A stretch of DNA of 64,000 nt, from IMG/VR virus record IMGVR_UViG_3300027541_000009, positions 186,001-250,000 of that record. One strand, given 5' to 3'. Both the position numbers and the translations under genes were made by a program. Below the pieces are notes generated by a model that was given only the letters and a program-made list of their open reading frames with translations, had not been told where the DNA came from and did not search any database. Positions 37,049-53,822 of the stretch are shown piece by piece; within the stretch, counting starts at the first letter, position 1, and every line of letters starts with the position of its first letter.

Positions 37049-37071
37049 TAAGAGGTAATTTACAAAGACAA

Positions 37072-38241: not shown

Positions 38242-38270
38242 CAATAAATAACTAAAAAGTTATTCATAAG

Positions 38271-38915: not shown

Positions 38916-38916
38916 A

Positions 38917-39165: not shown

Positions 39166-39205
39166 TTTTTACTTGGATCCTCTAAAGTGTACCTATAATG
39201 TAAGC

Positions 39206-39352: not shown

Positions 39353-39412
39353 CAGTTTCTAAACTGTCCACCAAATCACCCACACAGAACACTTTTCCTT
39401 TATTATTCTCAA

Positions 39413-39613: not shown

Positions 39614-39640
39614 ATACTAAAAAGTAGTGTTTAGATAACA

Positions 39641-40249
39641 ATGAAAACCTTTCAGGAGTTTATGTCTATTTGCGAAGAAGTTGATGACAAGTCAAAAGCA
39701 CTTGGATTCCAAGCAACAATCAGAAAAGCAAGACCTGGCGGTCGTATTGGTGCTGAACGCAAAAAGACAACTCCTGAAAAACGCCGTATGAAAGCAGTTG
39801 GCGGTGGTAAAATGGAACCAGCAAAAGAATACAAACCACGCAAGGATATTGGAAAACCAAAGGGTTCACAAATTCAACAACCAGAACAAGAGCGTGGATC
39901 TGCTAGAGAAAGACAACTGGCAGCAGCAAAAGAGGAAAGAAGAAAAGCAGCACAGGCAAGAATTGCTGCTAAGAAAGGTGGAGAATCACCAGCACCAGCA
40001 GCAGAAAAACCAAAAGCAAAAGAAGTAGTAAAAGCAGCAACTAAACTTCTTTCTAAGAAGAAAGCAACAGCAGAACCCGCTCCTGGATACAAACCACAAA
40101 AAGCATCTGGTCTAAGCAGACAAGAAAGATTGCATGTTACAAGAAAGGGAGAACAGAAACTCCGCGATCTTGTAATTGCAGGAGAAAGAGAAAGAGGTAA
40201 AAACATTAAGAGTGAGAAAGACCTCCAACACCGATACACTTCTCGCTGA
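39641..40249 (+). CDS. Candidate internal head protein (K/R/A-rich)
   Basis: CTAAATA late promoter at 39610; MKTFQEFMSICEE similar to T4 capsid-targeting MKTYQEFIAE. Confidence 0.7.
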   Translation: MKTFQEFMSICEEVDDKSKALGFQATIRKARPGGRIGAERKKTTPEKRRMKAVGGGKMEPAKEYKPRKDIGKPKGSQIQQPEQERGSARERQLAAAKEERRKAAQARIAAKKGGESPAPAAEKPKAKEVVKAATKLLSKKKATAEPAPGYKPQKASGLSRQERLHVTRKGEQKLRDLVIAGERERGKNIKSEKDLQHRYTSR

Positions 40250-40308
40250 TACTTACTTGGATCCTCTAAAGTGTCCCTATAGTATAAGCACTCAAACGAA
40301 ACAACATT

Positions 40309-40464
40309 ATGCTCTGGCAAGACCGCAACGGTAACTGGTTCAGCACTGTTTCTCCTATCGACATGAAAATTGAGCGAGCAATGATTGAAGCAAACGCTAA
40401 CAAAGTCTGGGAAGAAAAAGAGCGTTCTGGTGATTGGTTGTTTGATGAAATGTTTGGCGGTTGA
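40309..40464 (+). CDS. Hypothetical protein (51 aa)
   Basis: Read manually, between repeat copy 3 and a class-2 promoter. Confidence 0.6.
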   Translation: MLWQDRNGNWFSTVSPIDMKIERAMIEANANKVWEEKERSGDWLFDEMFGG

Positions 40465-40554
40465 TTAACTGTCCGCCAGCACCCTTTCCAAGCGTCAGGA
40501 AGGGTGCTATAATGTCTTTTAGATACCAAACCACCTGAAACTCTGTAATTCGTA

Positions 40555-41742
40555 ATGATTCCTCATCTGATCAATCTTCGTCCTCACCAAGAACGCGGAG
40601 TTGCTGCTATGCAACAGCATGATAAAGGTCAAGTCATTGTTCCTACTGGTGGTGGCAAGACTCTGAAGATGATCTATGATTGTCTGCGTGAGTTGCAGTC
40701 ACAAACTCCCCAGACCATTGTTGTTGTTGCTCCGCGTATTCTTCTGGCAGAGCAACTGTCTTCGGAGTTCCTGGAGTTTATCACTAACGCTGCTGTTTTC
40801 CATGTTCACAGTGGCGAAACTCATCACGAGTCTTCTACTCGCCCTCAAGAGATTCGCAACTGGGTTGATGCTAATGCCGACAATCATCGCCTGATTGTAA
40901 CCACCTACAACTCTCTGTCGCGTCTTCAAGTGGCAGAAGTTGATGTGGATACCATTTACTTTGACGAGGCACATAATTCTGTTCAGCGTCACTTTTTCCC
41001 TGCAACTGAGCACTTTGCTGCTAATGCACGCCGCTGCTACTTCTTCACTGCTACCAGGAAGACTTCGCTCACTCCTTCTAAACCTGGAATGAACGATCGT
41101 GATGTCTATGGAGATATTATTTGCCGCGTTTCTGCTCCTGAACTTGTTGATGGAGGATACATTATTGCTCCTAAGATTGTAGCGAAGAAGTTTGATGTAC
41201 TTGCACCAAAGCAGGTAACTGCTGAATGTGACAGTAGCAATCTGATGGACACTCTGGAGGATATTGATTGCAAGAAAATCCTGGTATGTGTTAAGTCTGC
41301 GAAGCAACTTATCAACCTGATGTCTCATACTGACTGTGCTTCCCAACTAAATCAGCGTGGTTATTCTTACCTCTACATCACCTCAAAAACTGGAGCGATT
41401 ATTGATGGTAAGAAAGTCAATCGTGAAGTATTCTTTGACACGCTCAATTCTTGGGGTCGTGACCCTAACAAGAAGTTTGTTTGCTTCCATCGCTCTATTT
41501 TGAGCGAAGGAATTAATGTCAGCGAACTAGAGGCGGTCGTCTTTCTTCGCAATATGGATGTGATTGAAATGACCCAAACTATTGGTCGGGTTCTTCGCCT
41601 TGGCGGCAAAGAAAAGGTCTTCGGTCTCTGTGTGGTGCCTGTATATTCCAAAGTTGGAGTATCTACAGAGCGAGCACTCCAGCGAGTTGTTGATGCTGTG
41701 TTTGAGAAGGGTGAGATGGTTGATAGTGTAGTGCGGCGGTGA
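40555..41742 (+). CDS. Superfamily 2 (DEAH; ResIII-like) helicase
   Basis: LRPHQ, PTGGGKT, VVAPRILL.EQ, FDEAH, FTAT, LSEGIN, QTIGRVLR. Confidence 0.9.
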   Translation: MIPHLINLRPHQERGVAAMQQHDKGQVIVPTGGGKTLKMIYDCLRELQSQTPQTIVVVAPRILLAEQLSSEFLEFITNAAVFHVHSGETHHESSTRPQEIRNWVDANADNHRLIVTTYNSLSRLQVAEVDVDTIYFDEAHNSVQRHFFPATEHFAANARRCYFFTATRKTSLTPSKPGMNDRDVYGDIICRVSAPELVDGGYIIAPKIVAKKFDVLAPKQVTAECDSSNLMDTLEDIDCKKILVCVKSAKQLINLMSHTDCASQLNQRGYSYLYITSKTGAIIDGKKVNREVFFDTLNSWGRDPNKKFVCFHRSILSEGINVSELEAVVFLRNMDVIEMTQTIGRVLRLGGKEKVFGLCVVPVYSKVGVSTERALQRVVDAVFEKGEMVDSVVRR

Positions 41743-41855
41743 GTCTCGCCTAAGAACCCAGTCACAGTCAGGGGTCAAAACCTGATTTTTCTTCAATTCT
41801 ACTGCAGCGGTGTCATAGGTCATCCACTGCAACCAAATTCCTGATTTTTACTAAA
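41743..41855. repeat. Copy 1 of duplicated ~110-bp intergenic element
   Basis: 38-bp identical core (41786-41823) with 47971-48008, similar flanks. Confidence 0.85.
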
Positions 41856-41869
41856 GTATAGATTTTACC

Positions 41870-42565
41870 ATGGATTTCGTTGAGTTCGTTCCTGCTTACA
41901 ACCGAATTAAAGCAAAAGGTTTCATAAAGTCTCATCGCAAAGGTGATACTGGAGTTGGTCATACTTTTGAACAAGAACTTGGTTTGACTGAGAATTGTAT
42001 CTCTGGTCCAGATATTGATGGAAAAGAGTTGAAAGCAGCAAGGAAAGGTGCTGGTGGAAAACAAACTCTCTTTACAAAGGAAGGTGAATGGCAGATACCT
42101 CAATTAAAGTTCCTAGAAACTTTTGGATTTCCTCACACAAAACACATTGGGGAATTGTCTGGACAATCTACTGTGACAAGAACCAAAAACAACAGAGGAT
42201 TTTGGATTCATACTGATGATGAATATGTTTCCATAAAGCACGAAGAACTGGAGATTGTTAGGTGGGATTGGGATTCACTTATTAAACAGTTTGCTCACAA
42301 ATTTCCATCTTGTGTTAAAGTATTTGCCGATGTTGAAGTTCGTAATGGTATAGAGTATTTTCACTACAATGAAGCGTATGTCTACATTTCTATTGATAAA
42401 AATCTGTTTCGTAAGGCAATCGAAGATGATGTAATTTCTATTGACTTACGACTGAGAACCCAGTATAATGTTGGCACTGGTAAGGGTGTTCGCAATCGTG
42501 GCACTTGCTTTCGTATAAATCACTCAAATATGGATAAATTGTTTGTAAAAGAGGTTCTTGAATGA
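41870..42565 (+). CDS. MvaI/BcnI-family restriction endonuclease
   Basis: GDTGVGHTFEQELGL.EN....PD..G.ELKA..TLFTK and C-terminal IDLR....RNRGT.FRI. Confidence 0.8.
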   Translation: MDFVEFVPAYNRIKAKGFIKSHRKGDTGVGHTFEQELGLTENCISGPDIDGKELKAARKGAGGKQTLFTKEGEWQIPQLKFLETFGFPHTKHIGELSGQSTVTRTKNNRGFWIHTDDEYVSIKHEELEIVRWDWDSLIKQFAHKFPSCVKVFADVEVRNGIEYFHYNEAYVYISIDKNLFRKAIEDDVISIDLRLRTQYNVGTGKGVRNRGTCFRINHSNMDKLFVKEVLE

Positions 42566-43425
42566 AGGATGTTATTCTTTATGGTGACTGCCGCTCAACT
42601 CTTAAACATTTTGTAGACGCTGGTGTAAAAGCACAAATGTGTGTGACCTCTCCACCATACTACGGTCTGCGTGATTACGGTAACGAAGATAATCAAATTG
42701 GTTTAGAAGAGTCGCCTGAAGAGTTTATCTCCCAACTGGTAGAGGTGTTTCGCGGTGTGCGTGATGTTCTTACAGATGATGGCACATTGTGGGTTAACAT
42801 TGGTGATTCTTATTACAACTATCGTTCTGGTAAAGGTCAGACACTACCTAAGCAATCTGTGGCATCTAACAACCAAGATTTGCCACAAATACGAAATCCT
42901 AGAAGAGGAAATAAACTTGAGGGTCTAAAGGATAAAGATTTGATTGGTATTCCTTGGATGCTAGCATTTGCTTTGCGTGCAGATGGTTGGTATCTACGAC
43001 AGGATATTATTTGGAGCAAACCAAATCCAATGCCCGAAAGTATGAAAGATCGATGTACCAAATCTCACGAATATATCTTCCTCTTATCTAAGAGCAAGAA
43101 CTATTATTTTGATGTTGATTCGATTAAAGAACCCACTGTAGATGGCAAGGAATTAAAACGGAAACGTAGTGTATGGGAAGTAACAACTAAACCATACAAA
43201 GGTTCTCACTTTGCAGTTTATCCTCCAGAACTTATTGAACCTTGTATTATTGCTGGTTCTCGTGAAGGTGACACTATTCTTGACCCATTTATGGGTAGTG
43301 GGACTACTGCTGCTGTTGCCAAATCTTTGGGAAGGAATTATGTTGGATGCGAACTTCACGAGGAGTATGGTAAATTGATTGAAAAGAGAGTTAGTGAAAC
43401 TGTTGGTCTTACCAAGTTTATGTAA
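42562..43425 (+). CDS. N4-cytosine/N6-adenine DNA methyltransferase (beta class)
   Basis: VTSPPY catalytic motif before DPFMGSGTT SAM motif; ATGA overlap with the endonuclease. Confidence 0.92.
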   Translation: MKDVILYGDCRSTLKHFVDAGVKAQMCVTSPPYYGLRDYGNEDNQIGLEESPEEFISQLVEVFRGVRDVLTDDGTLWVNIGDSYYNYRSGKGQTLPKQSVASNNQDLPQIRNPRRGNKLEGLKDKDLIGIPWMLAFALRADGWYLRQDIIWSKPNPMPESMKDRCTKSHEYIFLLSKSKNYYFDVDSIKEPTVDGKELKRKRSVWEVTTKPYKGSHFAVYPPELIEPCIIAGSREGDTILDPFMGSGTTAAVAKSLGRNYVGCELHEEYGKLIEKRVSETVGLTKFM

Positions 43426-43427
43426 CG

Positions 43428-43607
43428 ATGAAAGAAGGATTTACAATGTTCAAGGATACATATGCTGCAATTCCGTTTGGGAATCAGTATCTTATCATTC
43501 ACAATGGTCAGCAACTTGAGAAAGTTTGTAGGACCGAAAGTTCTGCGCGAAAGTATATCACAGACCACAAAAAAGGTAAGTCAATGGCAAAACTTCCAGT
43601 GAATTAA
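43428..43607 (+). CDS. Hypothetical protein (59 aa)
   Basis: Read manually; stop abuts repeat copy 4. Confidence 0.6.
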   Translation: MKEGFTMFKDTYAAIPFGNQYLIIHNGQQLEKVCRTESSARKYITDHKKGKSMAKLPVN

Positions 43608-43654
43608 ACTTGGATCCTCTAAAGTGTACCTATAGTGTAAGACGCATTTACCCT

Positions 43655-43897
43655 ATGCCTCGCGCTCGCAAGCAAACTGCTAATGTCTCTGTTGCTCCCG
43701 AAGTGTCCGTCCCACAGGTACTGATTACTCGTGAACAATACTTCCAAGACATTCAGGTTCGCTGGCAAATCCATCAGTATGAAGTCAACAAACTTCGTGA
43801 AGATGTGGTGAAGTTCACTCAAACTGTTTCGCCTTATGTGAAGCAAGTATTGAACTTTATTGAACAACAAATATCTGCCCGTCGTGTGGCAGTATAA
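43655..43897 (+). CDS. Hypothetical protein
   Basis: After repeat copy 4. Confidence 0.65.
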   Translation: MPRARKQTANVSVAPEVSVPQVLITREQYFQDIQVRWQIHQYEVNKLREDVVKFTQTVSPYVKQVLNFIEQQISARRVAV

Positions 43898-43965
43898 AAA
43901 CTGACACAGGAGCACTTGCAATTTAGCAAGTGCTCCTTTATTGTACCTTTGTTCGTAAAACTTCA

Positions 43966-44169
43966 ATGATTTTCCTCACTGTTCCTGGTCACGGTTGCGT
44001 CTATACTCTGTCGCAAGAAGATGGAGATGAGTTATATTATTCTCCCATTATGCAAAATGGCACTGTAGATCTTGAAGCGTTTGCTCCCGTAGGTCTTGAT
44101 GATGTAGATATGGATGAAATGGAACTCTTTGATATTCGCAATCGTCTTGCTAAACTGATGCAAGTTTGA
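43966..44169 (+). CDS. Hypothetical protein
   Basis: After class-2 promoter. Confidence 0.6.
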   Translation: MIFLTVPGHGCVYTLSQEDGDELYYSPIMQNGTVDLEAFAPVGLDDVDMDEMELFDIRNRLAKLMQV

Positions 44170-44207
44170 TTGATTGAAACTTGGATCCTCGAAAGTGTAC
44201 CTATAGT

Positions 44208-45125
44208 ATGAGTAAGCAACCAATGCAAAATAAGCACCTTGAGCACCCTGAAGATGAAATCCTGACGGGTAATCTATCTGTTCTTGATTGGTTCTCTGAG
44301 GTTGATAGTTTTATCAGCGTCAAGATGGATGGTGCTCCTGCTATTGTTTGGGGCACTAATCCTGAGAATGGTAAGTTTTTTGTCTGCACCAAAGCAGCAT
44401 TTAACAAGCAAAAGATTCGCCTTTGCTATAACGAAGATGACATCTTTACTCATTTTGGTGGACAACCAAGGGTAGCACAAATCCTCATCTTCTGTCTGGA
44501 TTATCTTCCTCGCACTAACAATGTGTATCAGGGAGATTGGATTGGTTTCGGTAAAGGGTTGGATACATTCACGCCCAACACGATTACCTATCGTTTTCCT
44601 GAAGTTGTGCGTCAAGAGATTATCGTTGCTCCACATACTTACTACACTGGTGAGCGTCTGCCTGAAATGGTAGCACATCCTATCACTAGCAAGTTTGCAA
44701 GCACAAAGAAATGTTTGTTTGTGCAACCTGCTGTGTCGCTGAATCCTTATCGTGAAGATTTGGAGGATGTGTGTAACTTTGCTAAACAAATGAGCACTCT
44801 GTGTGAGTTTGTGAGCGACAAGAAAGCATCACAAATCAAAAAAGAGATTAACGCTTGCATCCGAGAGCAACGCACCATCCGTGAGGATGAAATTGCAGAA
44901 AAATGCGATTGTGACATCAACCTCATCAGATTGTGGAAGTTGGTGAAGTCTATCAAGGATGATTTGTTCCTGTTCATTCATGAAGAGGATGACATTGAAT
45001 GTTTCCTCTGGGATGTTGCAGGTTTCCACGAGGGTTATGTCATTCATAACAAGTTTGGGTCTTACAAAGTAGTTGATCGTGAGGTATTCTCTCATGCCAA
45101 CTTCACAATCGCAAAGAGTTGGTAA
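44208..45125 (+). CDS. KxDG-motif (ligase/nucleotidyltransferase-like) phage protein
   Basis: N.HLEHPED, SVKMDGAPAIVWG, YQGD, EGYV, YKVVDR..FS..NF; resembles covalent nucleotidyltransferase motifs I, IV and V. Confidence 0.6.
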   Translation: MSKQPMQNKHLEHPEDEILTGNLSVLDWFSEVDSFISVKMDGAPAIVWGTNPENGKFFVCTKAAFNKQKIRLCYNEDDIFTHFGGQPRVAQILIFCLDYLPRTNNVYQGDWIGFGKGLDTFTPNTITYRFPEVVRQEIIVAPHTYYTGERLPEMVAHPITSKFASTKKCLFVQPAVSLNPYREDLEDVCNFAKQMSTLCEFVSDKKASQIKKEINACIREQRTIREDEIAEKCDCDINLIRLWKLVKSIKDDLFLFIHEEDDIECFLWDVAGFHEGYVIHNKFGSYKVVDREVFSHANFTIAKSW

Positions 45126-45153
45126 CTTGGATCCTCGAAAGTGTACCTATAGT

Positions 45154-45585
45154 ATGAGCACTCCTACGATGCAAGCACAAGCACAACAAACTATTGCAGA
45201 GAATGTGTATAAGAACACTCTGCTGCTGATTGAAGCACTGAAAGACAACTATCGTCAGTATTCTATTCGCGGTCACCAAAAGTTCGTGAATGATGCTGAT
45301 AATCAAGAGTATCATCAGCGCAAGATTGATGAACTCAAGTCTGGCAAGTGTGACATTGATTATACTGTTGAGACTGGCAAAAAGTATCACAAAGTCATTC
45401 TGGTGAATGGTGGTGGATCGAGATCGGTTCACTGTTTTATCGACAAGCAAAATGGAGGCGTTTTCAAGTCAGCGTCGTGGCGTAGTCCTGCAAAGGGTGA
45501 GCGATACAATCTCTTGTTAATTAAGGACCGTGAATGGTTGTTTGAGAACGCAGATTGGTCGTCCGGATATCTTTACAAAAGGTGA
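45154..45585 (+). CDS. Hypothetical protein (GKKY.K..SVHCFID..G.V.K.ASW..PAK family)
   Basis: ATG supplied by repeat copy 6. Confidence 0.75.
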   Translation: MSTPTMQAQAQQTIAENVYKNTLLLIEALKDNYRQYSIRGHQKFVNDADNQEYHQRKIDELKSGKCDIDYTVETGKKYHKVILVNGGGSRSVHCFIDKQNGGVFKSASWRSPAKGERYNLLLIKDREWLFENADWSSGYLYKR

Positions 45586-46074
45586 TTATTGCAAATAGTA
45601 ACCTTTGGACTTTTTCCCTTTATAAAGGTCTCCCCTATCAATTTTATGTTCTCTACAAAACTTTCCAAGATTAAAAACTTCTACTATTTCTCCAGTTGGT
45701 GTTACTAACCGATGAACTTTTGCTAATGCCAACTCCGTGTTTTTTTGATTACTGCACCACTCAAGATTACTGACATTGTTGTTTGTTTTTACGCCATCAA
45801 TGTGATTAACTTGAGGGAGATTATTTGGATTTGGAATGTAAGTTTCTGCGACCAAACGATGAACTTTTTTTAACTTCTGTCCTTCTTCCGTTTTAATCCA
45901 AACAGTCAAGTATCCCTTGCAATGATTATTAAATCTTCTTTTTTTTGGTTCTTTATCCAATACTACTCCCCACCCATCTCTTCCACGATTGCGCCAGTAT
46001 GACCAAACTTCACCGTTTTCTGTGATAAAATAACCTTTATGTTCTGGGTGTTCTTTCATCTTTAATACCTGCAT
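45586..46074 (-). CDS. HNH homing endonuclease
   Basis: VHRLVAETYIPNPNNLPQVNHIDGVKTNNNVSNLEW; minus-strand TATAAATA at about 46085-46092. Confidence 0.9.
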   Translation of the reverse strand: MQVLKMKEHPEHKGYFITENGEVWSYWRNRGRDGWGVVLDKEPKKRRFNNHCKGYLTVWIKTEEGQKLKKVHRLVAETYIPNPNNLPQVNHIDGVKTNNNVSNLEWCSNQKNTELALAKVHRLVTPTGEIVEVFNLGKFCREHKIDRGDLYKGKKSKGYYLQ

Positions 46075-46109
46075 ACTGTGTTATTATTTATAACCTATCT
46101 GTACGCAAA

Positions 46110-46334
46110 ATGAACTACCTTTGTTTTGTTGATGGTTTGCTAGAATACGCTAGTTCAGACCCTTCTTCTTTCGCTCACTATCAGTTAGTGTATGCTGAAG
46201 AGCACAAAAATGCTAATGTTCAGTATCTTACTCTGACTGACGAAGAGTATGACGAAATGTTCCCTTATGAGGAGGATGAACAACCTTACCTTGATGGTTG
46301 GGAAGATTCGATTTTTGATGGAAATGAAGAATGA
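46110..46334 (+). CDS. Hypothetical acidic protein
   Basis: 74 aa. Confidence 0.65.
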   Translation: MNYLCFVDGLLEYASSDPSSFAHYQLVYAEEHKNANVQYLTLTDEEYDEMFPYEEDEQPYLDGWEDSIFDGNEE

Positions 46335-46588
46335 GCACAATCCCTGACACTGAAATGACTTATGATGAACAAATCAAAGAAATGACTGTCACAAAGTCTC
46401 TCAAACTTTTGCGTGATGGGTTCAAGAACGAACTTGCCACTGCTCTATTCGCAGATGAGCGCACAACTGAACTCTTTGCCCAACTGATTAGTGAGTTTGT
46501 AGAGACAAACATTCCTGTGGTTGATGATGAGAACCAGATGGAACTTTCTATGATGCTGTTGGAAACTCTTGACATTGTAGCACGATGA
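46331..46588 (+). CDS. Hypothetical protein
   Basis: ATGA-coupled. Confidence 0.65.
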   Translation: MSTIPDTEMTYDEQIKEMTVTKSLKLLRDGFKNELATALFADERTTELFAQLISEFVETNIPVVDDENQMELSMMLLETLDIVAR

Positions 46589-46839
46589 CTTACTCTAACC
46601 TTTCAAAGATTCGCCCCAAACTTCGCACACAAGGAAACATTACAGGCAACTTCGGAAAACCCAAATCTAAGGGAGGTTCTACACTCAATGACATCGGTGG
46701 TAATGGTAACATAGGTGCGACACAGAATGAATACTTGAATCGTCTCTATTATGCTTTTGATAACACTACCGACTCTAAACTTCGTCACTTCATTTATACT
46801 GAAATCAAAAAGATTCTCATTCAACAAGGAAAGTGGTGA
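46585..46839 (+). CDS. Hypothetical protein
   Basis: ATGA-coupled. Confidence 0.7.
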   Translation: MTYSNLSKIRPKLRTQGNITGNFGKPKSKGGSTLNDIGGNGNIGATQNEYLNRLYYAFDNTTDSKLRHFIYTEIKKILIQQGKW

Positions 46840-46877
46840 GTGATTCTTACTTGGATCCTCTAAAGTGTACCTATAGT

Positions 46878-47120
46878 ATGAGCACAACCACTGAAATGGA
46901 TCAAGTCTTTCACTATGTCACCAACTGGAAAGAAGGTAAGGTGATGCAAATGTTCATTCAACAAATCACCCCTGAGTATCAAGAATGTGACCACAAATAT
47001 GTTGCTATTGCTCTCAATCCTGTAACTAACAAGAGCATGGTAATGTCTAATCCTCGCAGTCATTATGATACTCTCCAGTGGGTTCGTAAGTTCTGTGGTT
47101 CTTTCTCTCTTCTGTACTGA
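46878..47120 (+). CDS. Hypothetical protein
   Basis: ATG supplied by repeat copy 7. Confidence 0.65.
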   Translation: MSTTTEMDQVFHYVTNWKEGKVMQMFIQQITPEYQECDHKYVAIALNPVTNKSMVMSNPRSHYDTLQWVRKFCGSFSLLY

Positions 47121-47292
47121 TTATGAACAACTATCGACTCTTGATTGAGTATAAAGTCCCCAACAGTGCAGAGACTTACTATGAAGAAAGGTTCATCAAG
47201 TCTCGTTCATCTTGTGGTAAAATCGCTGATGATTACCTAGCACAAGACCGCACAAATCTTATCCGCTCTGTTGAAGTTACCCCTGTTTAATT

Positions 47293-47562
47293 ATGTACCG
47301 CACTCTTTCTGAACTTCGTGACTCTATCAACCAAATGATTGAGAGTCAAGGTGAGAACGCTCCCTGTGCTGCGTTTGTATTCACTCAACACGATGTCGTT
47401 GAGTTTGATGGTGAGGACAATCAAGAGAAGTATTTTTCTTCTCTTTTCACTCAAGATGTGCTCGCTGATGTAGGCGGTTCCGACTACATTTACGAACAGA
47501 TTGGTGAGGTGATTGATGATTCAATCCGTGACCGTAAGCAAATGTCCATCTACGCTAACTGA
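47293..47562 (+). CDS. Hypothetical protein
   Basis: 89 aa. Confidence 0.7.
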   Translation: MYRTLSELRDSINQMIESQGENAPCAAFVFTQHDVVEFDGEDNQEKYFSSLFTQDVLADVGGSDYIYEQIGEVIDDSIRDRKQMSIYAN

Positions 47563-47722
47563 TTATGACTAACAAAACACAACTTTTTGAGTTTCTGTAT
47601 GAAACTTGCAAAAAGAATAATGGTGTCTTAGAAGATACTTTGCGTAACTACATTGACTCCTTAGATGAGGTGGAACTTTGCGAACTTGAGGATTTTCTTG
47701 TCAACAACTTTGGAGATGATTG

Positions 47723-47917
47723 ATGACTGACGGTTACACTTTCAATCGCGTTAATTTTACTCCTAATGAGGAAAGTTGTATTCTTAAGTTTCTCAATCAA
47801 GCACGAGAATGTGGGTATCCTAGTGCAAACGAAGAATGGTATCCTGTGATCGATTCTATCTTCCAAAAATTCTTTAACTCTAACTTGAAAGAGGCACAAG
47901 AGTGGCAAACCCTGTGA
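47723..47917 (+). CDS. Hypothetical protein
   Basis: TGATG-coupled. Confidence 0.6.
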   Translation: MTDGYTFNRVNFTPNEESCILKFLNQARECGYPSANEEWYPVIDSIFQKFFNSNLKEAQEWQTL

Positions 47918-47928
47918 TTCTCACTTGT

Positions 47929-48041
47929 GTCTCACTGAGAACCCAGTCCACCACTGAAGCAAAAACCTGTTTTTTCTTCAATTCTACTGCAGCGGTGTCA
48001 TAGGTCATTCACTGCAGGGAAATCCTCAATTTTTTCTAAAA
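47929..48041. repeat. Copy 2 of duplicated ~110-bp intergenic element
   Basis: See copy 1 at 41743. Confidence 0.85.
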
Positions 48042-48054
48042 TACAAACAAACAC

Positions 48055-48198
48055 ATGAAGTACATCGTTGAACTCTACGTTGGTGGCAAAGTCTTCAAAG
48101 AAGAAGTGCAAGCAACCAACCCAAAAGATGCCCGTGAGACTGCACTGGCACGAAATCCTCACGCAAAAGTTGTTGCGGTCAATGTAAGTTTTCGTTGA
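48055..48198 (+). CDS. Hypothetical protein (MKYIVELYVGGKVF..A.NP.A family)
   Basis: 47 aa, read manually; its TGA lies in the left extension of repeat copy 8. Confidence 0.65.
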   Translation: MKYIVELYVGGKVFKEEVQATNPKDARETALARNPHAKVVAVNVSFR

Positions 48199-48232
48199 TT
48201 CTAACTTGGATCCTCTAAAGTGTACCTATAGT

Positions 48233-48403
48233 ATGAGCAACACTTTCACCGTCCGTTTCGTATCCGATGCTCTGGATTCTCCCGAGTATATTGGACCTTT
48301 CTACACTGAAGATGACGCCCAAGACTATTGCGATGCCCGCAACGGTTCGCTATCACTTTCTGGGATTCCTTCCTGGGTTGCCTGTTACTCTGTCGTTGAC
48401 TGA
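48233..48403 (+). CDS. Hypothetical protein (YIGPF motif)
   Basis: Only in-frame ATG is at the repeat's right edge. Confidence 0.6.
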   Translation: MSNTFTVRFVSDALDSPEYIGPFYTEDDAQDYCDARNGSLSLSGIPSWVACYSVVD

Positions 48404-48540
48404 TTAGTAATGCGAATTGCTTTCCTGATTGCTACTATTGCACTTGGTTTTAAAGTTGCAATTCCTGCTTATGCGACGGTGAATGAGTATCAAGAACGCC
48501 AAGCAGATCAGTTCTGCCAAATTGACCCTAACTACTGCAA

Positions 48541-48783
48541 ATGATGCAATTCCAAGTTACTGAAATCGCTTTTGATTTTGATGATGAATGTCCGTATTGT
48601 GGCGAGAATCAATCTCCAGAACACGATGCAGAATGTGATGGATTCTTGGAGTTTGATTATGCCACTCAAGCAACAATCGGTCAAATCTGGGAGGCAGATG
48701 ATGAAGAAGATTTAGTAGAAGAGATTACAACTGCCTACGGTTGGTGTATCAAATCCATTGATTATCGCCACATCTTGAAATGA
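48541..48783 (+). CDS. Hypothetical protein (WEADDEEDLVEEIT..GWCI)
   Basis: 80 aa. Confidence 0.65.
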   Translation: MMQFQVTEIAFDFDDECPYCGENQSPEHDAECDGFLEFDYATQATIGQIWEADDEEDLVEEITTAYGWCIKSIDYRHILK

Positions 48784-48809
48784 TTTCCCTCCCTAACTTC
48801 ACAAACAAA

Positions 48810-49034
48810 ATGACACTTACTCAAGACCAATACGATAAACTGCTTGCACTCTACATTGAGTCGATTGTTGATGGTATGGACCTCGACAGTTTGGTACAAT
48901 TTGCAAGCGATACGATTGAAGAGAATCTCCGCGAAACTTGCTCACTTCCAGAAGAGTTAATCGAAGAGATTTCACGACTCTATGATGAGGATTATGTGAA
49001 CGATTTGGTGGAAAGTGTAACACAAGAAAGTTGA
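48810..49034 (+). CDS. Hypothetical protein (IVDGMD..L)
   Basis: Acidic; stop lies in repeat extension. Confidence 0.65.
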   Translation: MTLTQDQYDKLLALYIESIVDGMDLDSLVQFASDTIEENLRETCSLPEELIEEISRLYDEDYVNDLVESVTQES

Positions 49035-49085
49035 TAGCAACTTGGATCCTCTAAAGTGTACCTATAGTATCACCGCAATTCCACA

Positions 49086-49676
49086 ATGTCCAAACTTACC
49101 ACTTTGCAGGTATCTGCCAAACTGAATGTAACTGATTTCAGTGCATTTGATAAACCTGGCAAGAACAAAGGTGCTCGCGGGCAACTGTTAGAAATTGTCC
49201 TTGGAGTTCCTAACTCTTCTGACCTCAAAGATTTGGAGGATGGAGAGATTAAGACTTTTACAGTTGGTGAATCTATTGCTGCCACACAGTTGAAGCATTG
49301 TCTATCTGAAATCATTGAAGATTCTGTGTCTTTTGATGATAGTAAGGTTGGACAGAAACTGAAGCAAACTGTATATGTTGGATTCACCCGTGAGAACGAT
49401 TATGTAGGTTCTGTTGTACTGAATGAGGAAACTCATCCCGAACACTATCAGGAACTGCGTGAGGATTATGAGTTCATTTGTGAGCAGATTCGCCGTGCAT
49501 TTGATATTGAAAGCGAACTGAATACAATCACTGGACCTAACGGATTGCTGCAGATTCGCACCAAAGCATCTAAAACTAACGGTCGCTATGTTCCTCTCCG
49601 TTTCGCAGGTGTGACGCTTAAGGATAAAGGAATGGCATTTTATTTGTGTGGTTCATTCGGTCGCAATCTTTTCTGA
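49086..49676 (+). CDS. MutH/Sau3AI-like PD-(D/E)xK endonuclease
   Basis: NKG..GQLLE..LG...S....D...GEIKT N-terminus and LQIRTKAS...AFYL C-terminus typical of the MutH/Sau3AI fold. Confidence 0.75.
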   Translation: MSKLTTLQVSAKLNVTDFSAFDKPGKNKGARGQLLEIVLGVPNSSDLKDLEDGEIKTFTVGESIAATQLKHCLSEIIEDSVSFDDSKVGQKLKQTVYVGFTRENDYVGSVVLNEETHPEHYQELREDYEFICEQIRRAFDIESELNTITGPNGLLQIRTKASKTNGRYVPLRFAGVTLKDKGMAFYLCGSFGRNLF

Positions 49677-49710
49677 TAGCAACTTGGATCCTCTAAAGTG
49701 TACCTATAGT

Positions 49711-49893
49711 ATGACTAACACCTCTTTCGACTTCCAAACCGACATCACTCCTGCACTTCTGGAGTTCATGTGCAACAATCACACAGATTTGAATGATTGT
49801 GTAGATTTCGTTTGCAATGTCTTTGACCTTGATGCAACTGACGAACTGATTGATTATGTTGCTGATGAGTTCGACGCTTTCTTCGGCAACTGA
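49711..49893 (+). CDS. Hypothetical acidic protein
   Basis: ATG at repeat copy 10. Confidence 0.6.
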   Translation: MTNTSFDFQTDITPALLEFMCNNHTDLNDCVDFVCNVFDLDATDELIDYVADEFDAFFGN

Positions 49894-49924
49894 TTCACAC
49901 TCACTGTTTTACCACTAAATCACA

Positions 49925-50107
49925 ATGACACACTACAATCCTTACGTTCAAAATCTCATTGAAATGGGATATGATGCCCAAGATTGTTACGCTGTTGCTG
50001 CAGTAGGTGAATTGAACCCTACTTATCCGCGTAACATTCACGGTCGCATCTTTGAGACTGAAGAAGAATATAAGCAAGCAGTTGCTGATTATATCAACGG
50101 TTTGTGA
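49925..50107 (+). CDS. Hypothetical protein
   Basis: 60 aa. Confidence 0.65.
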   Translation: MTHYNPYVQNLIEMGYDAQDCYAVAAVGELNPTYPRNIHGRIFETEEEYKQAVADYINGL

Positions 50108-50152
50108 TTCGTAAGAGTCACTAACTTGGATCCTCTAAAGTGTACCTATAGT

Positions 50153-50383
50153 ATGAGCACTTACACTTCACCTCTCACCTCTAAAGTCTACGAAATCGTC
50201 AAGACTTCACACACACGAAACGCATGGGATTCTGAAGGCAATTTGACTCCTTATGTGCAATCTGTCTTTGACATCTATCACGAAGGCAAAAAAGTTCAGT
50301 TTGCATTAACTGCTGAAGGTGTTGCTGAGAGTGTAGCACATCTTGAGAATCCTGGTCGTGATGTATCTTCCCGCTTTGACTGA
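50153..50383 (+). CDS. Hypothetical protein
   Basis: Only in-frame ATG is at repeat copy 11. Confidence 0.65.
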   Translation: MSTYTSPLTSKVYEIVKTSHTRNAWDSEGNLTPYVQSVFDIYHEGKKVQFALTAEGVAESVAHLENPGRDVSSRFD

Positions 50384-50676
50384 ATGAGACGACAGAAAGT
50401 GAAAACAATTCTGTTAATCTTTATCGTTGCGAGTATCCTATCACCAGGAGTTCGTAACATCACTGCCACCACATTACACACTGTTGCTGACATTATTGCA
50501 CCCCATGATTGAGACTGATTTCTACATTCTTTCCGAAGAACAATTTGCACAATTCTCACAACTTGCAGAGGAAATCAATGTGAGTATTGATTATTATTTG
50601 TGTGAGTTTTGTGATGTATCTGGACCTTTGATTGAAGTGTGATACTAACTTGGATCCTCTAAAGTGTACCTATAGT

Positions 50677-50880
50677 ATGAGCACTTCCCAAATGTCCCAA
50701 ATGTCTAAAGTCTACGCTGTGATTGGCGGTTTGGATTATGAAGGTGAAGACTTCAAATCTCTCCGCTTGTTTGATTGCTTCTCCGCTGCAGATGCTTACC
50801 TGAAGCATCTGGAAGCAAACTACGATTATGCTCTACTGGAAACCCGTGAGGTGAATGTAGAGTCTGCAATCGTTGCTTGA
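50677..50880 (+). CDS. Hypothetical protein (G.DYEGE)
   Basis: Single gene between repeat copies 12 and 13. Confidence 0.65.
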   Translation: MSTSQMSQMSKVYAVIGGLDYEGEDFKSLRLFDCFSAADAYLKHLEANYDYALLETREVNVESAIVA

Positions 50881-50933
50881 TTGCAACTTGGATCCTCTAA
50901 AGTGTACCTATAGTATAACCACAACTTCCAACC

Positions 50934-51251
50934 ATGCGAAAGATTGAACTCCAAATGAATAAAGCAATCATTGATTGCAAAGACTGGAAAAATGACAACA
51001 CTGAAGTTCTCTATTCGCCCGAAAGAGATGCCTCTTATGTGTATCTTCACGGCAATCATATTGCAACGATTGGTGATACCTTCCTTGAACTTTACACCTG
51101 TGGTTATAGAACTGTAACCACCAAATCACGTCTCAATGCTATTCTGAAAGTTCATGGAAATGATGCTCGTATCTTTCAACGTGACTTTGAATGGTTTGTG
51201 ATTGATAACGGCAACAAAGTTCCTTTCACTGAAGGTATGGTGCTTAACTGA
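50934..51251 (+). CDS. Hypothetical protein (MRKIE..LHGN.IA..TTKSRLNA family)
   Basis: Widespread phage family motif. Confidence 0.8.
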   Translation: MRKIELQMNKAIIDCKDWKNDNTEVLYSPERDASYVYLHGNHIATIGDTFLELYTCGYRTVTTKSRLNAILKVHGNDARIFQRDFEWFVIDNGNKVPFTEGMVLN

Positions 51252-51410
51252 TGACTAACGAACAAAAGATTGAGGCATTACCCACAATCCGTACCTTCCC
51301 ATATACGATTGGTCTCCGTACATACTTCTCGGAAGAAGAATATCAAAAAGCACTCCACGATTTCCTGACTTGGAGAAACCACCAACAGAGTAAAAGGAAC
51401 CGCACTAATG

Positions 51411-51713
51411 ATGACTAACGAACAAAAGATTGAGGCACTGACTAATCTTCTGGACAACGTGATTCACTCTCTGAGTATGAAACAATACGAGATTGAAGAT
51501 GCAACTGAATCTCATAAGTGTGAAGTAGAAGCAGACAACTATTACCAAAAGATGCTCACTCTAACTGAATCAAACAAAATGTTCACGATTCGCTACTTTA
51601 CACCGTATCAACAACAGTGGAGAACGCAAACATTCTCTACACTAGATGAAGCAAATCGTATGATTGAGTTCTACAAATCATGCGGAAGTCCTGCTGAACT
51701 CATTAACAACTAA
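51411..51713 (+). CDS. Hypothetical protein (possible two-module fusion)
   Basis: MTNEQKIEAL start duplicated at 51251. Confidence 0.6.
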   Translation: MTNEQKIEALTNLLDNVIHSLSMKQYEIEDATESHKCEVEADNYYQKMLTLTESNKMFTIRYFTPYQQQWRTQTFSTLDEANRMIEFYKSCGSPAELINN

Positions 51714-51720
51714 TCTTCCA

Positions 51721-51957
51721 ATGTTACTCTCCAAACAGTCATTCAACAATCAACAAGTTCTCCCTTTCATAGTAAAGAAAGAGGATGAATATACTGAAGA
51801 AGGTAGTTACTCACTTCACCTATTCTCCCGAATCGTTATCACCAAGGAAGGAAAGAAATACCGATACTTACCTTTACGATTTGAAGGAGAAGAAGCACGA
51901 TTCCGCAAACGTAGTGATGCAGAGGATTATGCAAGGTACAGATTAGCACTTGATTGA
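51721..51957 (+). CDS. Hypothetical protein
   Basis: ATG 51721; followed by terminator. Confidence 0.6.
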   Translation: MLLSKQSFNNQQVLPFIVKKEDEYTEEGSYSLHLFSRIVITKEGKKYRYLPLRFEGEEARFRKRSDAEDYARYRLALD

Positions 51958-51968
51958 TGATACACAGT

Positions 51969-51993
51969 GACCCCACATCAGGGGTCTTTTTTT
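51969..51993 (+). terminator. Rho-independent terminator
   Basis: GACCCC-ACATCA-GGGGTC-T7 between convergent genes. Confidence 0.75.
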
Positions 51994-53005
51994 ATGCTTT
52001 TTCGTACCATCTATAACCATAAGCATTGCACCAAGTTTGCCCATTGTTTATACGTTGAATGTTGTTTTTGATATTAGCAACGCCACTATAATTACCATCA
52101 CCTTTGATAAAGAATGACGCCTCACTCATACTACCAAATTCTACGATTTCGTTGGTTTTAATACTTACACCATAGACAGGTTTCTTTCTTTTTTCGTTGC
52201 TAATTGCAGCAATTTTTTTATAGTGTTCTATTGAATTTGTTTTTGTTGCTGGTGTCCAATCTGTTGGTTTTGATCTAAAGAAATACCAACCTTTTACCTG
52301 TAATTTGCTATTGTCGGGACTGTTAAGTGAGTGATGAATAGCGTGATTATTTGTACGATTTCCTTGTATTTCTTCTGCCGCATCTGCCATTGATTTCCAC
52401 ATCTTTTTACGCCCTAATGTTGGATTGATTCCATATACAGCACCACGAACATTTACTCTCTTTTCTATTACTTTAGGTGTTTCACCTTTCCAAGCCCATC
52501 TATATCCAAGTGCTTGAAATGTCACACCTTTAATGCAAGCAATTATCCCAGTTTTTCCCTTTTTATTTCCACAACTATCAGCAGCAATTCCTACACTCTC
52601 ATAGTCTCTAACCCATTCACCTTCTAATGTATAACAACTCACTGCTTTGGAATGTGGATGATTTGCCCAATACTTTTTTGGTTTCTTTACACCATCACCA
52701 CCTAATGTAATGTTATATCCATTCTTACCACAAGTATCAAGTTTGTTTATCCAAAAGGTTTCACGTTCATTAACATTATCATCGCTACATTCTTCCAATA
52801 CTCTAAACTTAAAGTTATCTGCTCCGTACTTACATATGGCACGAACAATAGGCATAGAGTGAGATGAATTGTTCTCTGCTAAATTATCCTTACTTCTTGC
52901 GTTCTGTAGGTGTTGCTTCCATCTATCATATGGGTTGGGTTGTGTAGTCTTTCCCACATAGAGTTTGCTATTCTCAAGGTTGGTGATTGAGTAGATGTAT
53001 GCCAC
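51992..53005 (-). CDS. GIY-YIG homing endonuclease with NUMOD1-like repeats
   Basis: YIYSITN..N.KLYVGKT..RW.QH..KYG.DNF..LE..RE..WI..GYN; repeated F/Y.S...AA...I...GY.W modules; minus-strand TATAAATA at 53032-53039. Confidence 0.9.
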   Translation of the reverse strand: MAYIYSITNLENSKLYVGKTTQPNPYDRWKQHLQNARSKDNLAENNSSHSMPIVRAICKYGADNFKFRVLEECSDDNVNERETFWINKLDTCGKNGYNITLGGDGVKKPKKYWANHPHSKAVSCYTLEGEWVRDYESVGIAADSCGNKKGKTGIIACIKGVTFQALGYRWAWKGETPKVIEKRVNVRGAVYGINPTLGRKKMWKSMADAAEEIQGNRTNNHAIHHSLNSPDNSKLQVKGWYFFRSKPTDWTPATKTNSIEHYKKIAAISNEKRKKPVYGVSIKTNEIVEFGSMSEASFFIKGDGNYSGVANIKNNIQRINNGQTWCNAYGYRWYEKA

Positions 53006-53065
53006 TGAATTGATGAAAAATGTACTTGCGTTATTTATATTTAAGTGCTGAAATAATGATATTAG

Positions 53066-53129
53066 TTTTCCACAATGTTGTGGAAAAAGTATAATAAATG
53101 TGTGGAAAAACTGTTAGAATTGTGGAAAA
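53066..53129. promoter_or_regulatory. Cluster of four DnaA-box-like 9-mers (TTTTCCACA)
   Basis: TTTTCCACA at 53066 (+) and TGTGGAAAA at 53079, 53101, 53121. Confidence 0.7.
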
Positions 53130-53174
53130 CTTATAGTCATTTAAATGTCTCTGGGGGTCGTTATCTTACAGGTC

Positions 53175-53204
53175 ATTCTATCACACTCGCCCCCAAAATG
53201 TCAA
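53175..53204 (-). promoter_or_regulatory. sigma70-type promoter pointing toward the DnaA boxes
   Basis: Minus strand TTGACA-18 nt-TAGAAT with extended TG. Confidence 0.6.
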
Positions 53205-53277
53205 TACCCCCGCGTTCTCAAATCCCCACAATCCCCCCGCATAAATCCACCGACCCCTGATAAATACCCCCAGACCA

Positions 53278-53306
53278 TTGACAAAAACCGCCCAGCATCT
53301 TATAGT
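53278..53306 (+). promoter_or_regulatory. sigma70-type promoter
   Basis: TTGACA-17 nt-TATAGT. Confidence 0.75.
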
Positions 53307-53333
53307 AGTTTCATAACACACAGGAGCGAACTT

Positions 53334-53507
53334 ATGTCAGTTGCATATCAGCAGGCACAGAAGCAGCGTTATAGGATTACTCTGGATCTATCAGTGTTCG
53401 GTGACTTCGACCCACACCAGATTGATTGGGAGAAGTTATTCAAGTTGGAACCTGCAGAGAAGTGTGATGCTTATGTTGAGGACCTAAGTACACCTGACCG
53501 ATGGTAA
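53334..53507 (+). CDS. Hypothetical protein
   Basis: AGGAG SD; start 53334 within track ORF 53145. Confidence 0.7.
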   Translation: MSVAYQQAQKQRYRITLDLSVFGDFDPHQIDWEKLFKLEPAEKCDAYVEDLSTPDRW

Positions 53508-53588
53508 TTTGGTATCAATTTATACCATATAAGGCGTTTTTATTTTGTTAACATAAAGCATAAATAATCGGGTCTTTATGTTAACAAA

Positions 53589-53768
53589 ATGAGAACACTA
53601 AAATATAAACATTTGGGCGACATGAGGATTATACGAGTCGCCCAAATAACCACTGATATTCTACCTCAACTGCAAGAGGTTATGCAACAGTTAGAGGAGA
53701 ACGGTGAGGATAGTCGTGAGGTGATATTGCGCGTCTTAAGTGATATCGAAGACCGTCTGGGTAACTGA
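53589..53768 (+). CDS. Hypothetical protein (59 aa)
   Basis: Read manually; start lies in a 17-bp hairpin arm; stop abuts repeat copy 14. Confidence 0.55.
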   Translation: MRTLKYKHLGDMRIIRVAQITTDILPQLQEVMQQLEENGEDSREVILRVLSDIEDRLGN

Positions 53769-53822
53769 AACTTGGATCCTCTAAAGTGTACCTATAGTGT
53801 AAGGACAACCACAAACCACTAA

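What the first reader, a model, noticed from the sequence alone, without database searches (positions are those of the whole stretch)
49032..49712. MutH-like gene precisely bracketed by 39-bp identical direct repeats
Seen in sequence: TGATAGCAACTTGGATCCTCTAAAGTGTACCTATAGTAT occurs identically at 49032-49070 and 49674-49712, including the normally variable N4 (AGCA), and encloses only the nuclease gene. This is the pattern expected if a circular one-gene cassette recombined into an existing repeat. It is the best single example supporting the cassette model.
Basis: partly seen in the sequence, partly recalled or inferred. Interest (0 to 1): 0.65.

Follow-up and report, generated by a model that had tools for sequence, protein, structure and literature searches.

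The report
Cyanophage promoter-like repeats shuffle small genes
The two identical 39-base repeats around a MutH-like nuclease gene are two of 14 copies of a promoter-like spacer that heads each small-gene unit in a freshwater T4-like cyanophage, and relatives show such units being gained, lost and swapped by recombination inside these spacers, a process already known from T4-like coliphages.

Summary
In detail: an exact 39-nt direct repeat lies at 49032-49070 and 49674-49712 and encloses one ORF (49086-49676). That ORF is MutH/Sau3AI-like by profile and by fold.

The pair is not special. Its 32-nt core has 14 same-strand copies across window 35650-53800. Another pair shares 43 identical nt, and two more share 39. 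Only 3 of the 7 extra bases are variable.

The genome is a T4-like cyanomyovirus assembled from river metagenomes. Each relative carries its own version of the repeat: identity is 0.84-0.96 within a genome and 0.51-0.85 between most genomes.

The predicted empty site exists. In one relative the left gene joins the right gene through a single repeat, with the rest of the gene order unchanged. About ten further contigs join a more distant left-gene homologue to the right gene in the same way. At least seven lineages carry the nuclease at this site, so it is old here, not newly inserted.

In one relative the homology breakpoint lies inside a chimeric repeat. This matches PeSL-type modular shuffling (Arbiol 2010), here without the stem-loop.

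The promoter role, circular intermediates and the direction of change (gain or loss) remain untested.

The parts
49032..49070 (+). Left copy of the repeat: stop codon TGA of the upstream DUF7326 gene, T, three variable bases (AGC), then the 32-nt core
   Evidence: Exact match; in-register family alignment
49086..49676 (+). MutH/Sau3AI-family PD-(D/E)XK nuclease gene (196 aa, P0001); D49, E54 and K56 form the candidate catalytic triad
   Evidence: phrog_15364 at E 1.9e-76. Family profile against PDB: MutH E 3e-16, Sau3AI 5e-5. 27 of 55 family members hit Pfam MutH. AF2 model pLDDT 96. Top Foldseek hits are MutH 2aor/2aoq/2azo, probability 1.0, TM 0.65. D49 and K56 invariant in the family alignment
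49674..49712 (+). Right copy of the repeat; its TGA is the nuclease gene's stop codon, and its last two bases plus the next G form the ATG of the downstream ORF
48810..49034 (+). Left neighbour gene (gL), DUF7326 family
   Evidence: Pfam PF24012, E 2.8e-19; homologues used to find relatives
49711..49893 (+). Right neighbour gene (gR), 60 aa, no known family
   Evidence: 86 relatives found in IMG/VR, 80 kept
35650..53800 (+). Array of 14 copies of the 32-nt core. Core starts: 35650, 39170, 40254, 43607, 44178, 45124, 46848, 48203, 49039, 49681, 50123, 50647, 50885, 53769. All are intergenic and co-oriented with the genes
50123..50678 (+). Another repeat pair, with 43 nt identical in register, bracketing two small ORFs; it shows that the 39-nt pair is not exceptional
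34800..35651 (+). D12-class (Dam-like) N6-adenine DNA methyltransferase at the head of the array; a possible functional partner of a GATC-type nuclease (inference only)
   Evidence: Pfam PF02086, E 6e-60

Best explanation
The window is part of a T4-like cyanomyovirus (Kyanoviridae-like) assembled from river metagenomes.

The 39-nt repeats are two of 14 copies of one intergenic element. Each copy has three parts: the stop codon of the preceding ORF; a 32-nt promoter-like core with a conserved AAAGTG box and a -10-like TAGTAT; and, in half the copies, the next ORF's ATG. Each copy heads a unit of one to a few small genes in the phage's variable small-gene region.

The MutH-like nuclease gene is one such single-gene unit. 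Because the copies are near-identical and co-oriented, the phage's general recombination machinery can cross over between them. This has three effects: it deletes, inserts or swaps whole units; it creates chimeric repeats; and it keeps the copies within one genome alike (concerted evolution). The identity of the two flanking copies is a consequence of that array-wide homogeneity, not a footprint of one insertion.

Shown here: the repeat family; genome-specific repeat versions; occupied and empty alleles with one versus two repeats; a breakpoint inside a repeat; the MutH-type fold.

Inferred: that the element is an early promoter; that exchange is by homologous recombination; that circles may be intermediates.
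For: - Repeat family of 14 copies, all on one strand and all intergenic.
- The homologous nuclease gene in S-CAM7 is flanked by a different repeat, a G/C hairpin plus TACAAT, which precedes nearly every small gene there.
- Ten relatives each carry their own version of the repeat. Identity is 0.84-0.96 within a genome and 0.51-0.85 between most genomes; only L037, L038 and L032 share a version.
- Empty-site allele in L039 (same contig as L058 and L047): gL at 84% aa, one repeat, then gR 92%, g49925 95% and g50934 95%, in window order.
- About ten more contigs join a gL-like gene to gR through one repeat. MutH lies directly upstream of gR in 7 lineages. At least 5 state changes are needed on the gR tree, against 11-15 with shuffled labels.
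- L076 and L067/L068 share a 98-99% identical gR unit. Homology starts inside the repeat, and L076's copy there is a chimera of two repeat versions.
- Unit order differs among relatives. An extra unit lies between MutH and gR in L037/L038. The order is permuted in L066. G001 is 99.7-100% identical up to 47917, then mosaic, and has no nuclease homologue.
- The mechanism has precedent in T4-like phages, including detected mini-circles (PMC2839356, PMC4122927).
Against: - Promoter function is not demonstrated. The consensus scan did not call the repeats.
- The best reading is TTGGAT, a 17-nt spacer, then TAGTAT, which matches only 7 of 12 consensus positions. The -35-side box differs completely between repeat versions.
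- In 7 of 14 copies the downstream ORF's only plausible ATG overlaps the -10-like hexamer. A transcript started from that promoter would therefore lack it.
- No stem-loop is present: MFE z-scores are about 0. The element is therefore not a full PeSL.
- No read-level evidence exists for circles or deletions in this population. Unitig depth of the nuclease unit equals that of its flanks.
- The exact empty allele rests on one 5.2-kb metagenome contig. The other empty sites involve more divergent gL homologues.
- Within-genome homogeneity could also reflect selection by a genome-specific DNA-binding factor rather than gene conversion.
Confidence: 0.75

Rival explanations
1. One reading: a 642-bp circular one-gene cassette recently recombined into a resident repeat in this lineage, and the identical 39-nt flanks are the footprint of that event.
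For: The two flanking copies are identical, including three otherwise variable bases. An empty-site allele exists. PeSL mini-circles are documented in RB49/phi1.
Against: The same gL-MutH-gR order occurs in diverged lineages with other repeat versions (L054-57, L076-78, L079/80), and gL-MutH adjacency occurs in L037/38 and L040. Occupancy is therefore old. Other repeat pairs are as long or longer. Homologous insertion does not predict identical upstream flanks. The right-hand TGATAG is shared with L029. The three-base match has an empirical chance of about 0.1 per pair.
Confidence: 0.1
2. The nuclease is a free-standing homing endonuclease. It cuts genomes that lack it near the gL/gR junction and is copied in by repair, which would explain its sporadic presence at one fixed site.
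For: The unit holds only a nuclease gene. It shows presence/absence polymorphism at the same gL/gR site in many lineages. The same region holds a GIY-YIG Seg-like gene. T4-like phages are known to carry free-standing homing endonucleases (general knowledge).
Against: The closest solved relatives are MutH, Sau3AI, MvaI and BcnI, which are short-site nicking or restriction enzymes and not known homing enzymes. Non-nuclease units in the same array show the same indel and permutation behaviour. The gene is also found next to other neighbours (L032, L053, L097, S-CAM7). Nuclease sequences have diverged to 76-92% aa like their flanks, with no sign of a recent sweep.
Confidence: 0.07
3. An integron-like system: the repeats are attC-type sites used by a site-specific recombinase that captures promoterless cassettes.
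For: The layout looks like an array of short ORFs separated by a conserved about 40-nt element on one strand.
Against: No tyrosine integrase (PF00589) is found in the 204.8-kb record, which is 78% complete. The repeats have no hairpin or inverted-repeat structure. The copies are near-identical in sequence, unlike attC sites. Each unit carries its own promoter-like box. The crossover seen in L076 is a simple homologous junction.
Confidence: 0.02
4. Nothing mobile: these are ordinary tandem regulatory sites of a polycistronic region, and gene-content differences arise by unrelated illegitimate events.
For: The repeats are simply the regular intergenic elements of this region. The nuclease unit's unitig depth equals that of its flanks in four runs.
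Against: Indel boundaries coincide with repeats in every compared case: L039, L067/68 against L076, and the extra unit in L037/38. A chimeric repeat marks a breakpoint.
Confidence: 0.05

Closest known systems
PeSL (promoter-early stem-loop) cassettes of T4-like phages RB49/phi1, PST/T4 and nt-1/KVP40 (Arbiol et al. 2010, PMC2839356; Comeau et al. 2014, PMC4122927)
   Same: A conserved repeated intergenic regulatory motif, concentrated in a variable region of small ORFs of unknown function. Indels and replacements between relatives are bounded by the motif. Chimeric motifs mark the junctions. No dedicated recombinase is found.
   Different: There is no stem-loop or terminator half; S-CAM7's version does have one. 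The match to the sigma-70 consensus is weak. The stop codon of the upstream gene, and often the ATG of the downstream gene, lie inside the repeat. The host is a cyanobacterium. Repeat versions are strongly genome-specific. Mini-circles have not been tested.
Integron gene cassettes (attC sites plus IntI)
   Same: A one-strand array of short gene units separated by a recurring site; units are present or absent between relatives.
   Different: There is no integrase and no attC-type secondary structure. The repeats are conserved in sequence rather than in structure. Each unit has its own promoter-like box.
MutH (E. coli, H. influenzae) and the type II enzymes Sau3AI, MvaI and BcnI
   Same: Full-length profile match, the same fold, and a conserved D...E-x-K motif.
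   Different: P0001 itself misses Pfam's MutH model. It is about 30 aa shorter than MutH. It is phage-encoded with no MutS/MutL context. Its target sequence and methylation sensitivity are unknown.
Free-standing homing endonucleases of T4 (Seg, Mob)
   Same: A lone nuclease gene between conserved genes, sporadically present among relatives, with its own promoter.
   Different: The nuclease family is different. Non-nuclease neighbours show the same mobility. No target-site evidence exists.

Membership tests
PeSL regulatory cassette | Repeated conserved intergenic motif concentrated in a hyperplastic region of a T4-like phage | tested here: met
   14 copies in 18 kb, and nowhere else in the 204.8-kb record. 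T4-like context: gp6 baseplate, Kyano_Gp96, and homologues only in Synechococcus myophages
PeSL regulatory cassette | Sigma-70-type early promoter (-35 and -10 boxes matching the consensus) | tested here: inconclusive
   The -10-like TAGTAT (TATAGT/TATAAT) is conserved in all repeat versions. However, the consensus scan does not call the sites, the -35 side varies between versions, and no TSS data are available
PeSL regulatory cassette | Adjacent stable stem-loop (terminator) in the same element | tested here: not met
   MFE of -5 to -14 kcal/mol with z about 0 for all 14 copies. S-CAM7 units fold into G/C hairpins with z as low as -5
PeSL regulatory cassette | Indels and replacements between relatives bounded by the motif; chimeric motifs at junctions | tested here: met
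   L039 empty site; L076 chimeric repeat at the homology breakpoint; extra or permuted units
PeSL regulatory cassette | Excised mini-circles carrying one motif plus the ORF(s) | not testable with these tools
   Only Logan unitigs were available, and they break at each repeat
Integron cassette array | Tyrosine integrase (IntI) | tested here: not met
   No PF00589 match in the record; the positive controls matched. The record is 78% complete
Integron cassette array | attC sites: imperfect inverted repeats that fold as hairpins | tested here: not met
   No structure beyond that of shuffled sequence
MutH/Sau3AI nuclease family | Sequence-profile membership | tested here: met
   Family profile against MutH chains E 3e-16 over the full length, Sau3AI 5e-5. 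27 of 55 members hit PF02976. P0001 alone has no Pfam hit
MutH/Sau3AI nuclease family | MutH-type PD-(D/E)XK fold | tested here: met
   AF2 pLDDT 96.2. The top five Foldseek hits are MutH, followed by Sau3AI and MvaI
MutH/Sau3AI nuclease family | Catalytic Asp, Glu-x-Lys | tested here: met
   D49 and K56 are invariant in the 55-sequence alignment. The DGEIK segment aligns with MutH's GVELK. The equivalence to MutH D70/E77/K79 comes from general knowledge
MutH/Sau3AI nuclease family | GATC recognition and methylation sensitivity | not testable with these tools
   Needs biochemistry
Free-standing homing endonuclease | Cleaves the cognate empty site and is preferentially inherited | not testable with these tools
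   Only the sporadic distribution was observed

The most novel reading that the evidence does not exclude
The MutH-like nuclease acts on the array itself. In the window and several relatives the repeat carries a GATC (GGATCC or GGATCG) in its upstream box, and those versions co-occur with the nuclease gene. Nicking at unmethylated or hemimethylated GATC in the repeats, set against the phage's Dam-like methylase, could stimulate recombination between repeats or could time early transcription. That would make the nuclease a driver of the shuffling rather than a passenger.
Probability: 0.05. Interest if true: 0.75.

Novelty: new variant of a known kind. Interest (0 to 1): 0.4.

Why it matters
This extends repeat-mediated modular shuffling of accessory genes, described for T4-like phages of enterobacteria and vibrios, to abundant freshwater and estuarine T4-like cyanophages. 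A published analysis of the cyanophage S-PM2 found no dense PeSL arrays (PMC4503421).

Three points may be useful beyond this locus:
- A promoter-like repeat without a terminator hairpin appears to be enough for such shuffling.
- The repeats evolve in concert within each genome.
- Metagenomes give natural pairs of occupied and empty sites, and of chimeric repeats, with which to study how phages trade small genes, including nuclease and methylase genes likely involved in phage-host or phage-phage conflict.

For annotation, identical repeats around a gene in such arrays should not be read as insertion scars.

Tried and rejected
- Megablast of 47000-52000 against GenBank phages gave no match. The phage was identified through protein searches instead.
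- The sigma-70 and terminator scan did not flag the repeats and found no more sites than in shuffled sequence.
- Reads were laid from four river-metagenome runs. All were Logan unitigs that end in every repeat copy. The listed 'joints' have sides of 29-39 nt, which is the repeat itself. Nothing can be concluded about the 642-bp circle or a deletion allele. Unit depth equals flank depth.
- G001 was examined as a possible empty allele. It lacks the nuclease, but the whole segment is replaced and reordered and carries a different repeat type, so it is not a precise empty site.
- An exact gapped pattern for the empty junction, scanned over JGI metagenome contigs, found only the contig already known.
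- The GATC-in-repeat to MutH link has a strong raw association (15/1/3/37) but only 5 independent contrasts, p 0.25. Many GATC-version array fragments lack the gene, and G001 is a counter-example. It is kept only as a low-probability lead.
- Rfam found no family in 35000-54500.
- No integrase was found.
- P0001 alone against Pfam and PDB gave nothing. The relation to MutH appeared only with the family profile and the fold.

Full report
**1. The observation**

The 39-nt string is present without mismatch at 49032-49070 and 49674-49712 on the + strand. No such match occurs in 100 dinucleotide-preserving shuffles. Between the copies lies one substantial ORF, 49086-49676 (196 aa, P0001). The description is therefore accurate.

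The pair belongs to a larger family.
- The 32-nt core (window 49039-49070) occurs 14 times with at most 3 mismatches. All copies are on the + strand and intergenic, between 35650 and 53800.
- These are the only copies in the 204,829-bp virus record that holds the window.
- Compared in register, copies 50123/50647 share 43 identical nt. Copies 48203/50123 and 48203/50647 share 39 each.
- Of the seven bases that extend the flagged pair beyond the core, TGA is the stop codon of the upstream ORF in both copies, and TGAT sits at that position in 9 of 14 copies. Only three variable bases are shared.
- That triplet is not random across the family (act x4, tct x2, agc x2, tga x2). About one pair in ten matches by composition alone.

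**2. What the genome and the gene are**

P0001 matches phrog_15364 (E 1.9e-76). By tblastn it has homologues only in Synechococcus myophages: S-CAM7 at 70%, S-RIM8 at 58%.

Other genes in the window fit a T4-like cyanophage:
- a gp6-type baseplate protein and Kyano_Gp96;
- a Dam-like D12 methylase;
- an MvaI/BcnI-family endonuclease with an N4/N6 methylase;
- a helicase;
- a GIY-YIG endonuclease.

The runs that hold the sequence are river metagenomes. A 284-kb relative that carries the identical nuclease gene is rated complete.

P0001 alone hits nothing in Pfam or PDB. An exhaustive search gave 194 cluster representatives. A 55-sequence alignment of them supports the MutH assignment:
- 27 members hit Pfam MutH;
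- the profile matches MutH chains at E 3e-16 over the full length, Sau3AI at 5e-5 and BcnI at 1e-3;
- the AlphaFold model (pLDDT 96) finds MutH as its five best PDB matches, followed by Sau3AI and MvaI;
- D49 and K56 are invariant, and the DGEIK segment aligns with MutH's catalytic GVELK.

'MutH-like' is therefore right at the level of family and fold. Target site and biological role are untested.

**3. What the repeat is**

Each copy has the same layout:
- It begins with stop codons. The upstream ORF ends in the TGA of TGAT in most copies, and copy 44178 has TGA in all three frames.
- A 32-nt core follows. The part shared with all relatives is an AAAGTG box, then 5-6 nt, then TAGTAT.
- Seven of the 14 copies end in an ATG that opens the next ORF.

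A promoter-like reading is available in the window's version: TTGGAT, a 17-nt spacer, TAGTAT. Two copies read TATAAT two bases upstream. This matches only 7 of 12 consensus positions, and the consensus scan does not report the sites.

There is no hairpin. Folding energies equal those of shuffled sequence, and Rfam finds nothing.

In S-CAM7 the homologous nuclease gene is flanked on both sides by a quite different repeat: a G/C-rich hairpin plus TACAAT and an about 20-nt leader. That repeat precedes almost every small gene there. This is the classical PeSL layout of Arbiol et al. 2010.

I therefore read the window's element as the early-promoter half of such a unit, with moderate confidence. 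The embedded ATGs remain unexplained. gR, g50153 and g48233 have no alternative start. Where a second ATG follows 15-18 nt later, it is always in frame.

**4. Relatives**

*Near-identical genomes.* Scanning IMG/VR with the core gave contigs 100% identical to 48200-50200. It also gave G001. This contig is 99.7-100% identical to window 35268-47917 and then becomes a reordered mosaic of 72-88% pieces. It lacks the nuclease and uses another repeat type.

*Repeat versions.* Contigs encoding 88-92% identical nucleases, and loci found with the left neighbour gL and the right neighbour gR, show that every genome has its own version of the repeat. Mean identity is 0.84-0.96 within a genome and 0.51-0.85 between most genomes; three contigs share one version. 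This is concerted evolution of the array.

- In L039 (also fetched as L058 and L047) gL (84% aa) is followed by a single repeat. Then come gR (92%), g49925 (95%), g50153, g50427, g50677 and g50934 (95%). This is the window's order minus one [repeat + nuclease] unit.
- About ten further contigs join a gL-like gene to gR through one repeat.
- The nuclease lies directly upstream of gR in seven distinct lineages that carry several repeat versions.
- On a tree of gR the state 'nuclease adjacent' needs at least five changes, against 11-15 for shuffled labels.
- The nuclease has thus been at this site for a long time and has been lost, gained or uncoupled repeatedly. The tree is unrooted, so gain cannot be told from loss.

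*A crossover inside the repeat.* L076 (occupied) and L067/L068 (empty) share a gR unit that is 98-99% identical, while everything to its left is unrelated. The homology begins inside the repeat. L076's copy at that place has the 5' half of its own repeat version and the 3' half of the L067 version. L054 carries similar hybrids.

*Other rearrangements.* Units are also inserted (an extra unit between the nuclease and gR in L037/L038) and permuted (L066), and the nuclease has other neighbours in L032, L053, L097 and S-CAM7.

**5. Mechanism**

The best-supported account is homologous exchange between near-identical, co-oriented regulatory repeats. It deletes, inserts and swaps promoter-bounded gene units and homogenises the repeats. 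This is the PeSL model (PMC2839356, PMC4122927).

The flanking 39-nt identity follows from the array's homogeneity. It is not an insertion scar. Homologous insertion would not equalise the upstream flanks, and the right-hand TGATAG is shared with L029, so it is ancestral to the nuclease gene's 3' end.

No integrase is present in the record. Circles of 642 bp are plausible by analogy but could not be tested. The available runs are Logan unitigs, which end in each repeat, and the nuclease unit's depth equals that of its flanks.

**6. Comparison and novelty**

The system works like PeSL shuffling but fails one defining PeSL feature, the stem-loop. Its promoter identity is also unproven. I therefore file it as a variant of that kind, not as a strict member.

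A paper on the cyanophage S-PM2 found no dense PeSLs (PMC4503421). I found no paper describing such arrays in cyanophages in four further literature searches.

Integron-type and homing-endonuclease readings are weaker; see the rival explanations.

One speculative lead remains. Repeat versions containing GATC co-occur with the nuclease gene (raw counts 15/1/3/37), but there are only five independent contrasts (p 0.25) and there are counter-examples (G001).

**7. Verdict**

The cassette idea is right in its general form and is already known for T4-like phages. The specific reading of the 39-nt identity as the trace of a recent circular insertion is not supported. Interest is moderate.

Noticed in passing
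window 41777-41858 and 47962-48043: A second intergenic repeat: 82 nt, 87% identical, with a 9-bp hairpin (CTGCAGCGG...CCACTGCAG). The near-identical relative G001 stops matching the window at 47917, next to copy 2, and lacks 47918-48047. This element may be another recombination or termination site.
   Followed up: partly
window 44178-50678 (repeat copies at 44178, 45124, 46848, 48203, 49681, 50123, 50647); L030: In 7 of 14 copies the last two bases of the repeat plus G form an ATG that opens the next ORF. gR, g50153 and g48233 have no other start. Where a second ATG follows 15-18 nt later it is always in frame (4 of 4 in the window, 5 of 5 in L030). This is hard to reconcile with TAGTAT being the -10 box of that gene's own promoter. 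It suggests read-through translation, leaderless starts or an RNA-level role.
   Followed up: partly
window 34800-35651, 41870-43425, 49086-49676, 51992-53005 (minus strand): The small-gene array carries several DNA-conflict genes: a Dam-like D12 methylase, an MvaI/BcnI-family endonuclease overlapping an N4/N6 methylase (an apparent restriction-modification pair), the MutH-like nuclease, and a GIY-YIG Seg-like endonuclease on the opposite strand.
   Followed up: partly
gR-anchored loci L048-L112; pattern loci L128-L221: Repeat versions with GATC in the upstream box co-occur with the MutH-like gene. Rows: GATC+/MutH+ 15, GATC+/MutH- 1, GATC-/MutH+ 3, GATC-/MutH- 37. Only 5 phylogenetically independent contrasts exist (p 0.25), and many GATC-version fragments lack the gene.
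   Followed up: partly
whole window: Four-base palindromes are depleted relative to Markov expectation: GGCC O/E 0.09, ACGT 0.23, GATC 0.40. This is typical of restriction avoidance. 15 of the 109 GATC sites are the GGATCC sites, nearly all of which lie in the repeats.
   Followed up: no
L028 (G001:C1:50500-61000), minus strand: The part of G001 that diverges from the window uses a different repeat family of about 96 nt, with 5 copies. It shares a GTGTA..CTATAG centre with the window's repeat but not its flanks. One genome can therefore carry two repeat types side by side.
   Followed up: partly
window 51249-51277 and 51409-51437; 50153-50383 and 50677-50880: There are tandem paralogues inside the array. 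Two adjacent ORFs start with an identical 29 nt. The ORFs behind the 43-nt-identical repeat pair share an N-terminal SKVY motif. Both point to local duplication of units.
   Followed up: no
L001 (S-CAM7, MT586120.1 57775-66362): The marine phage S-CAM7 has a dense array of at least 13 hairpin-plus-TACAAT units before nearly every small gene. It is a full PeSL-like array in a cultured cyanophage, and its record annotates all these genes as hypothetical.
   Followed up: partly
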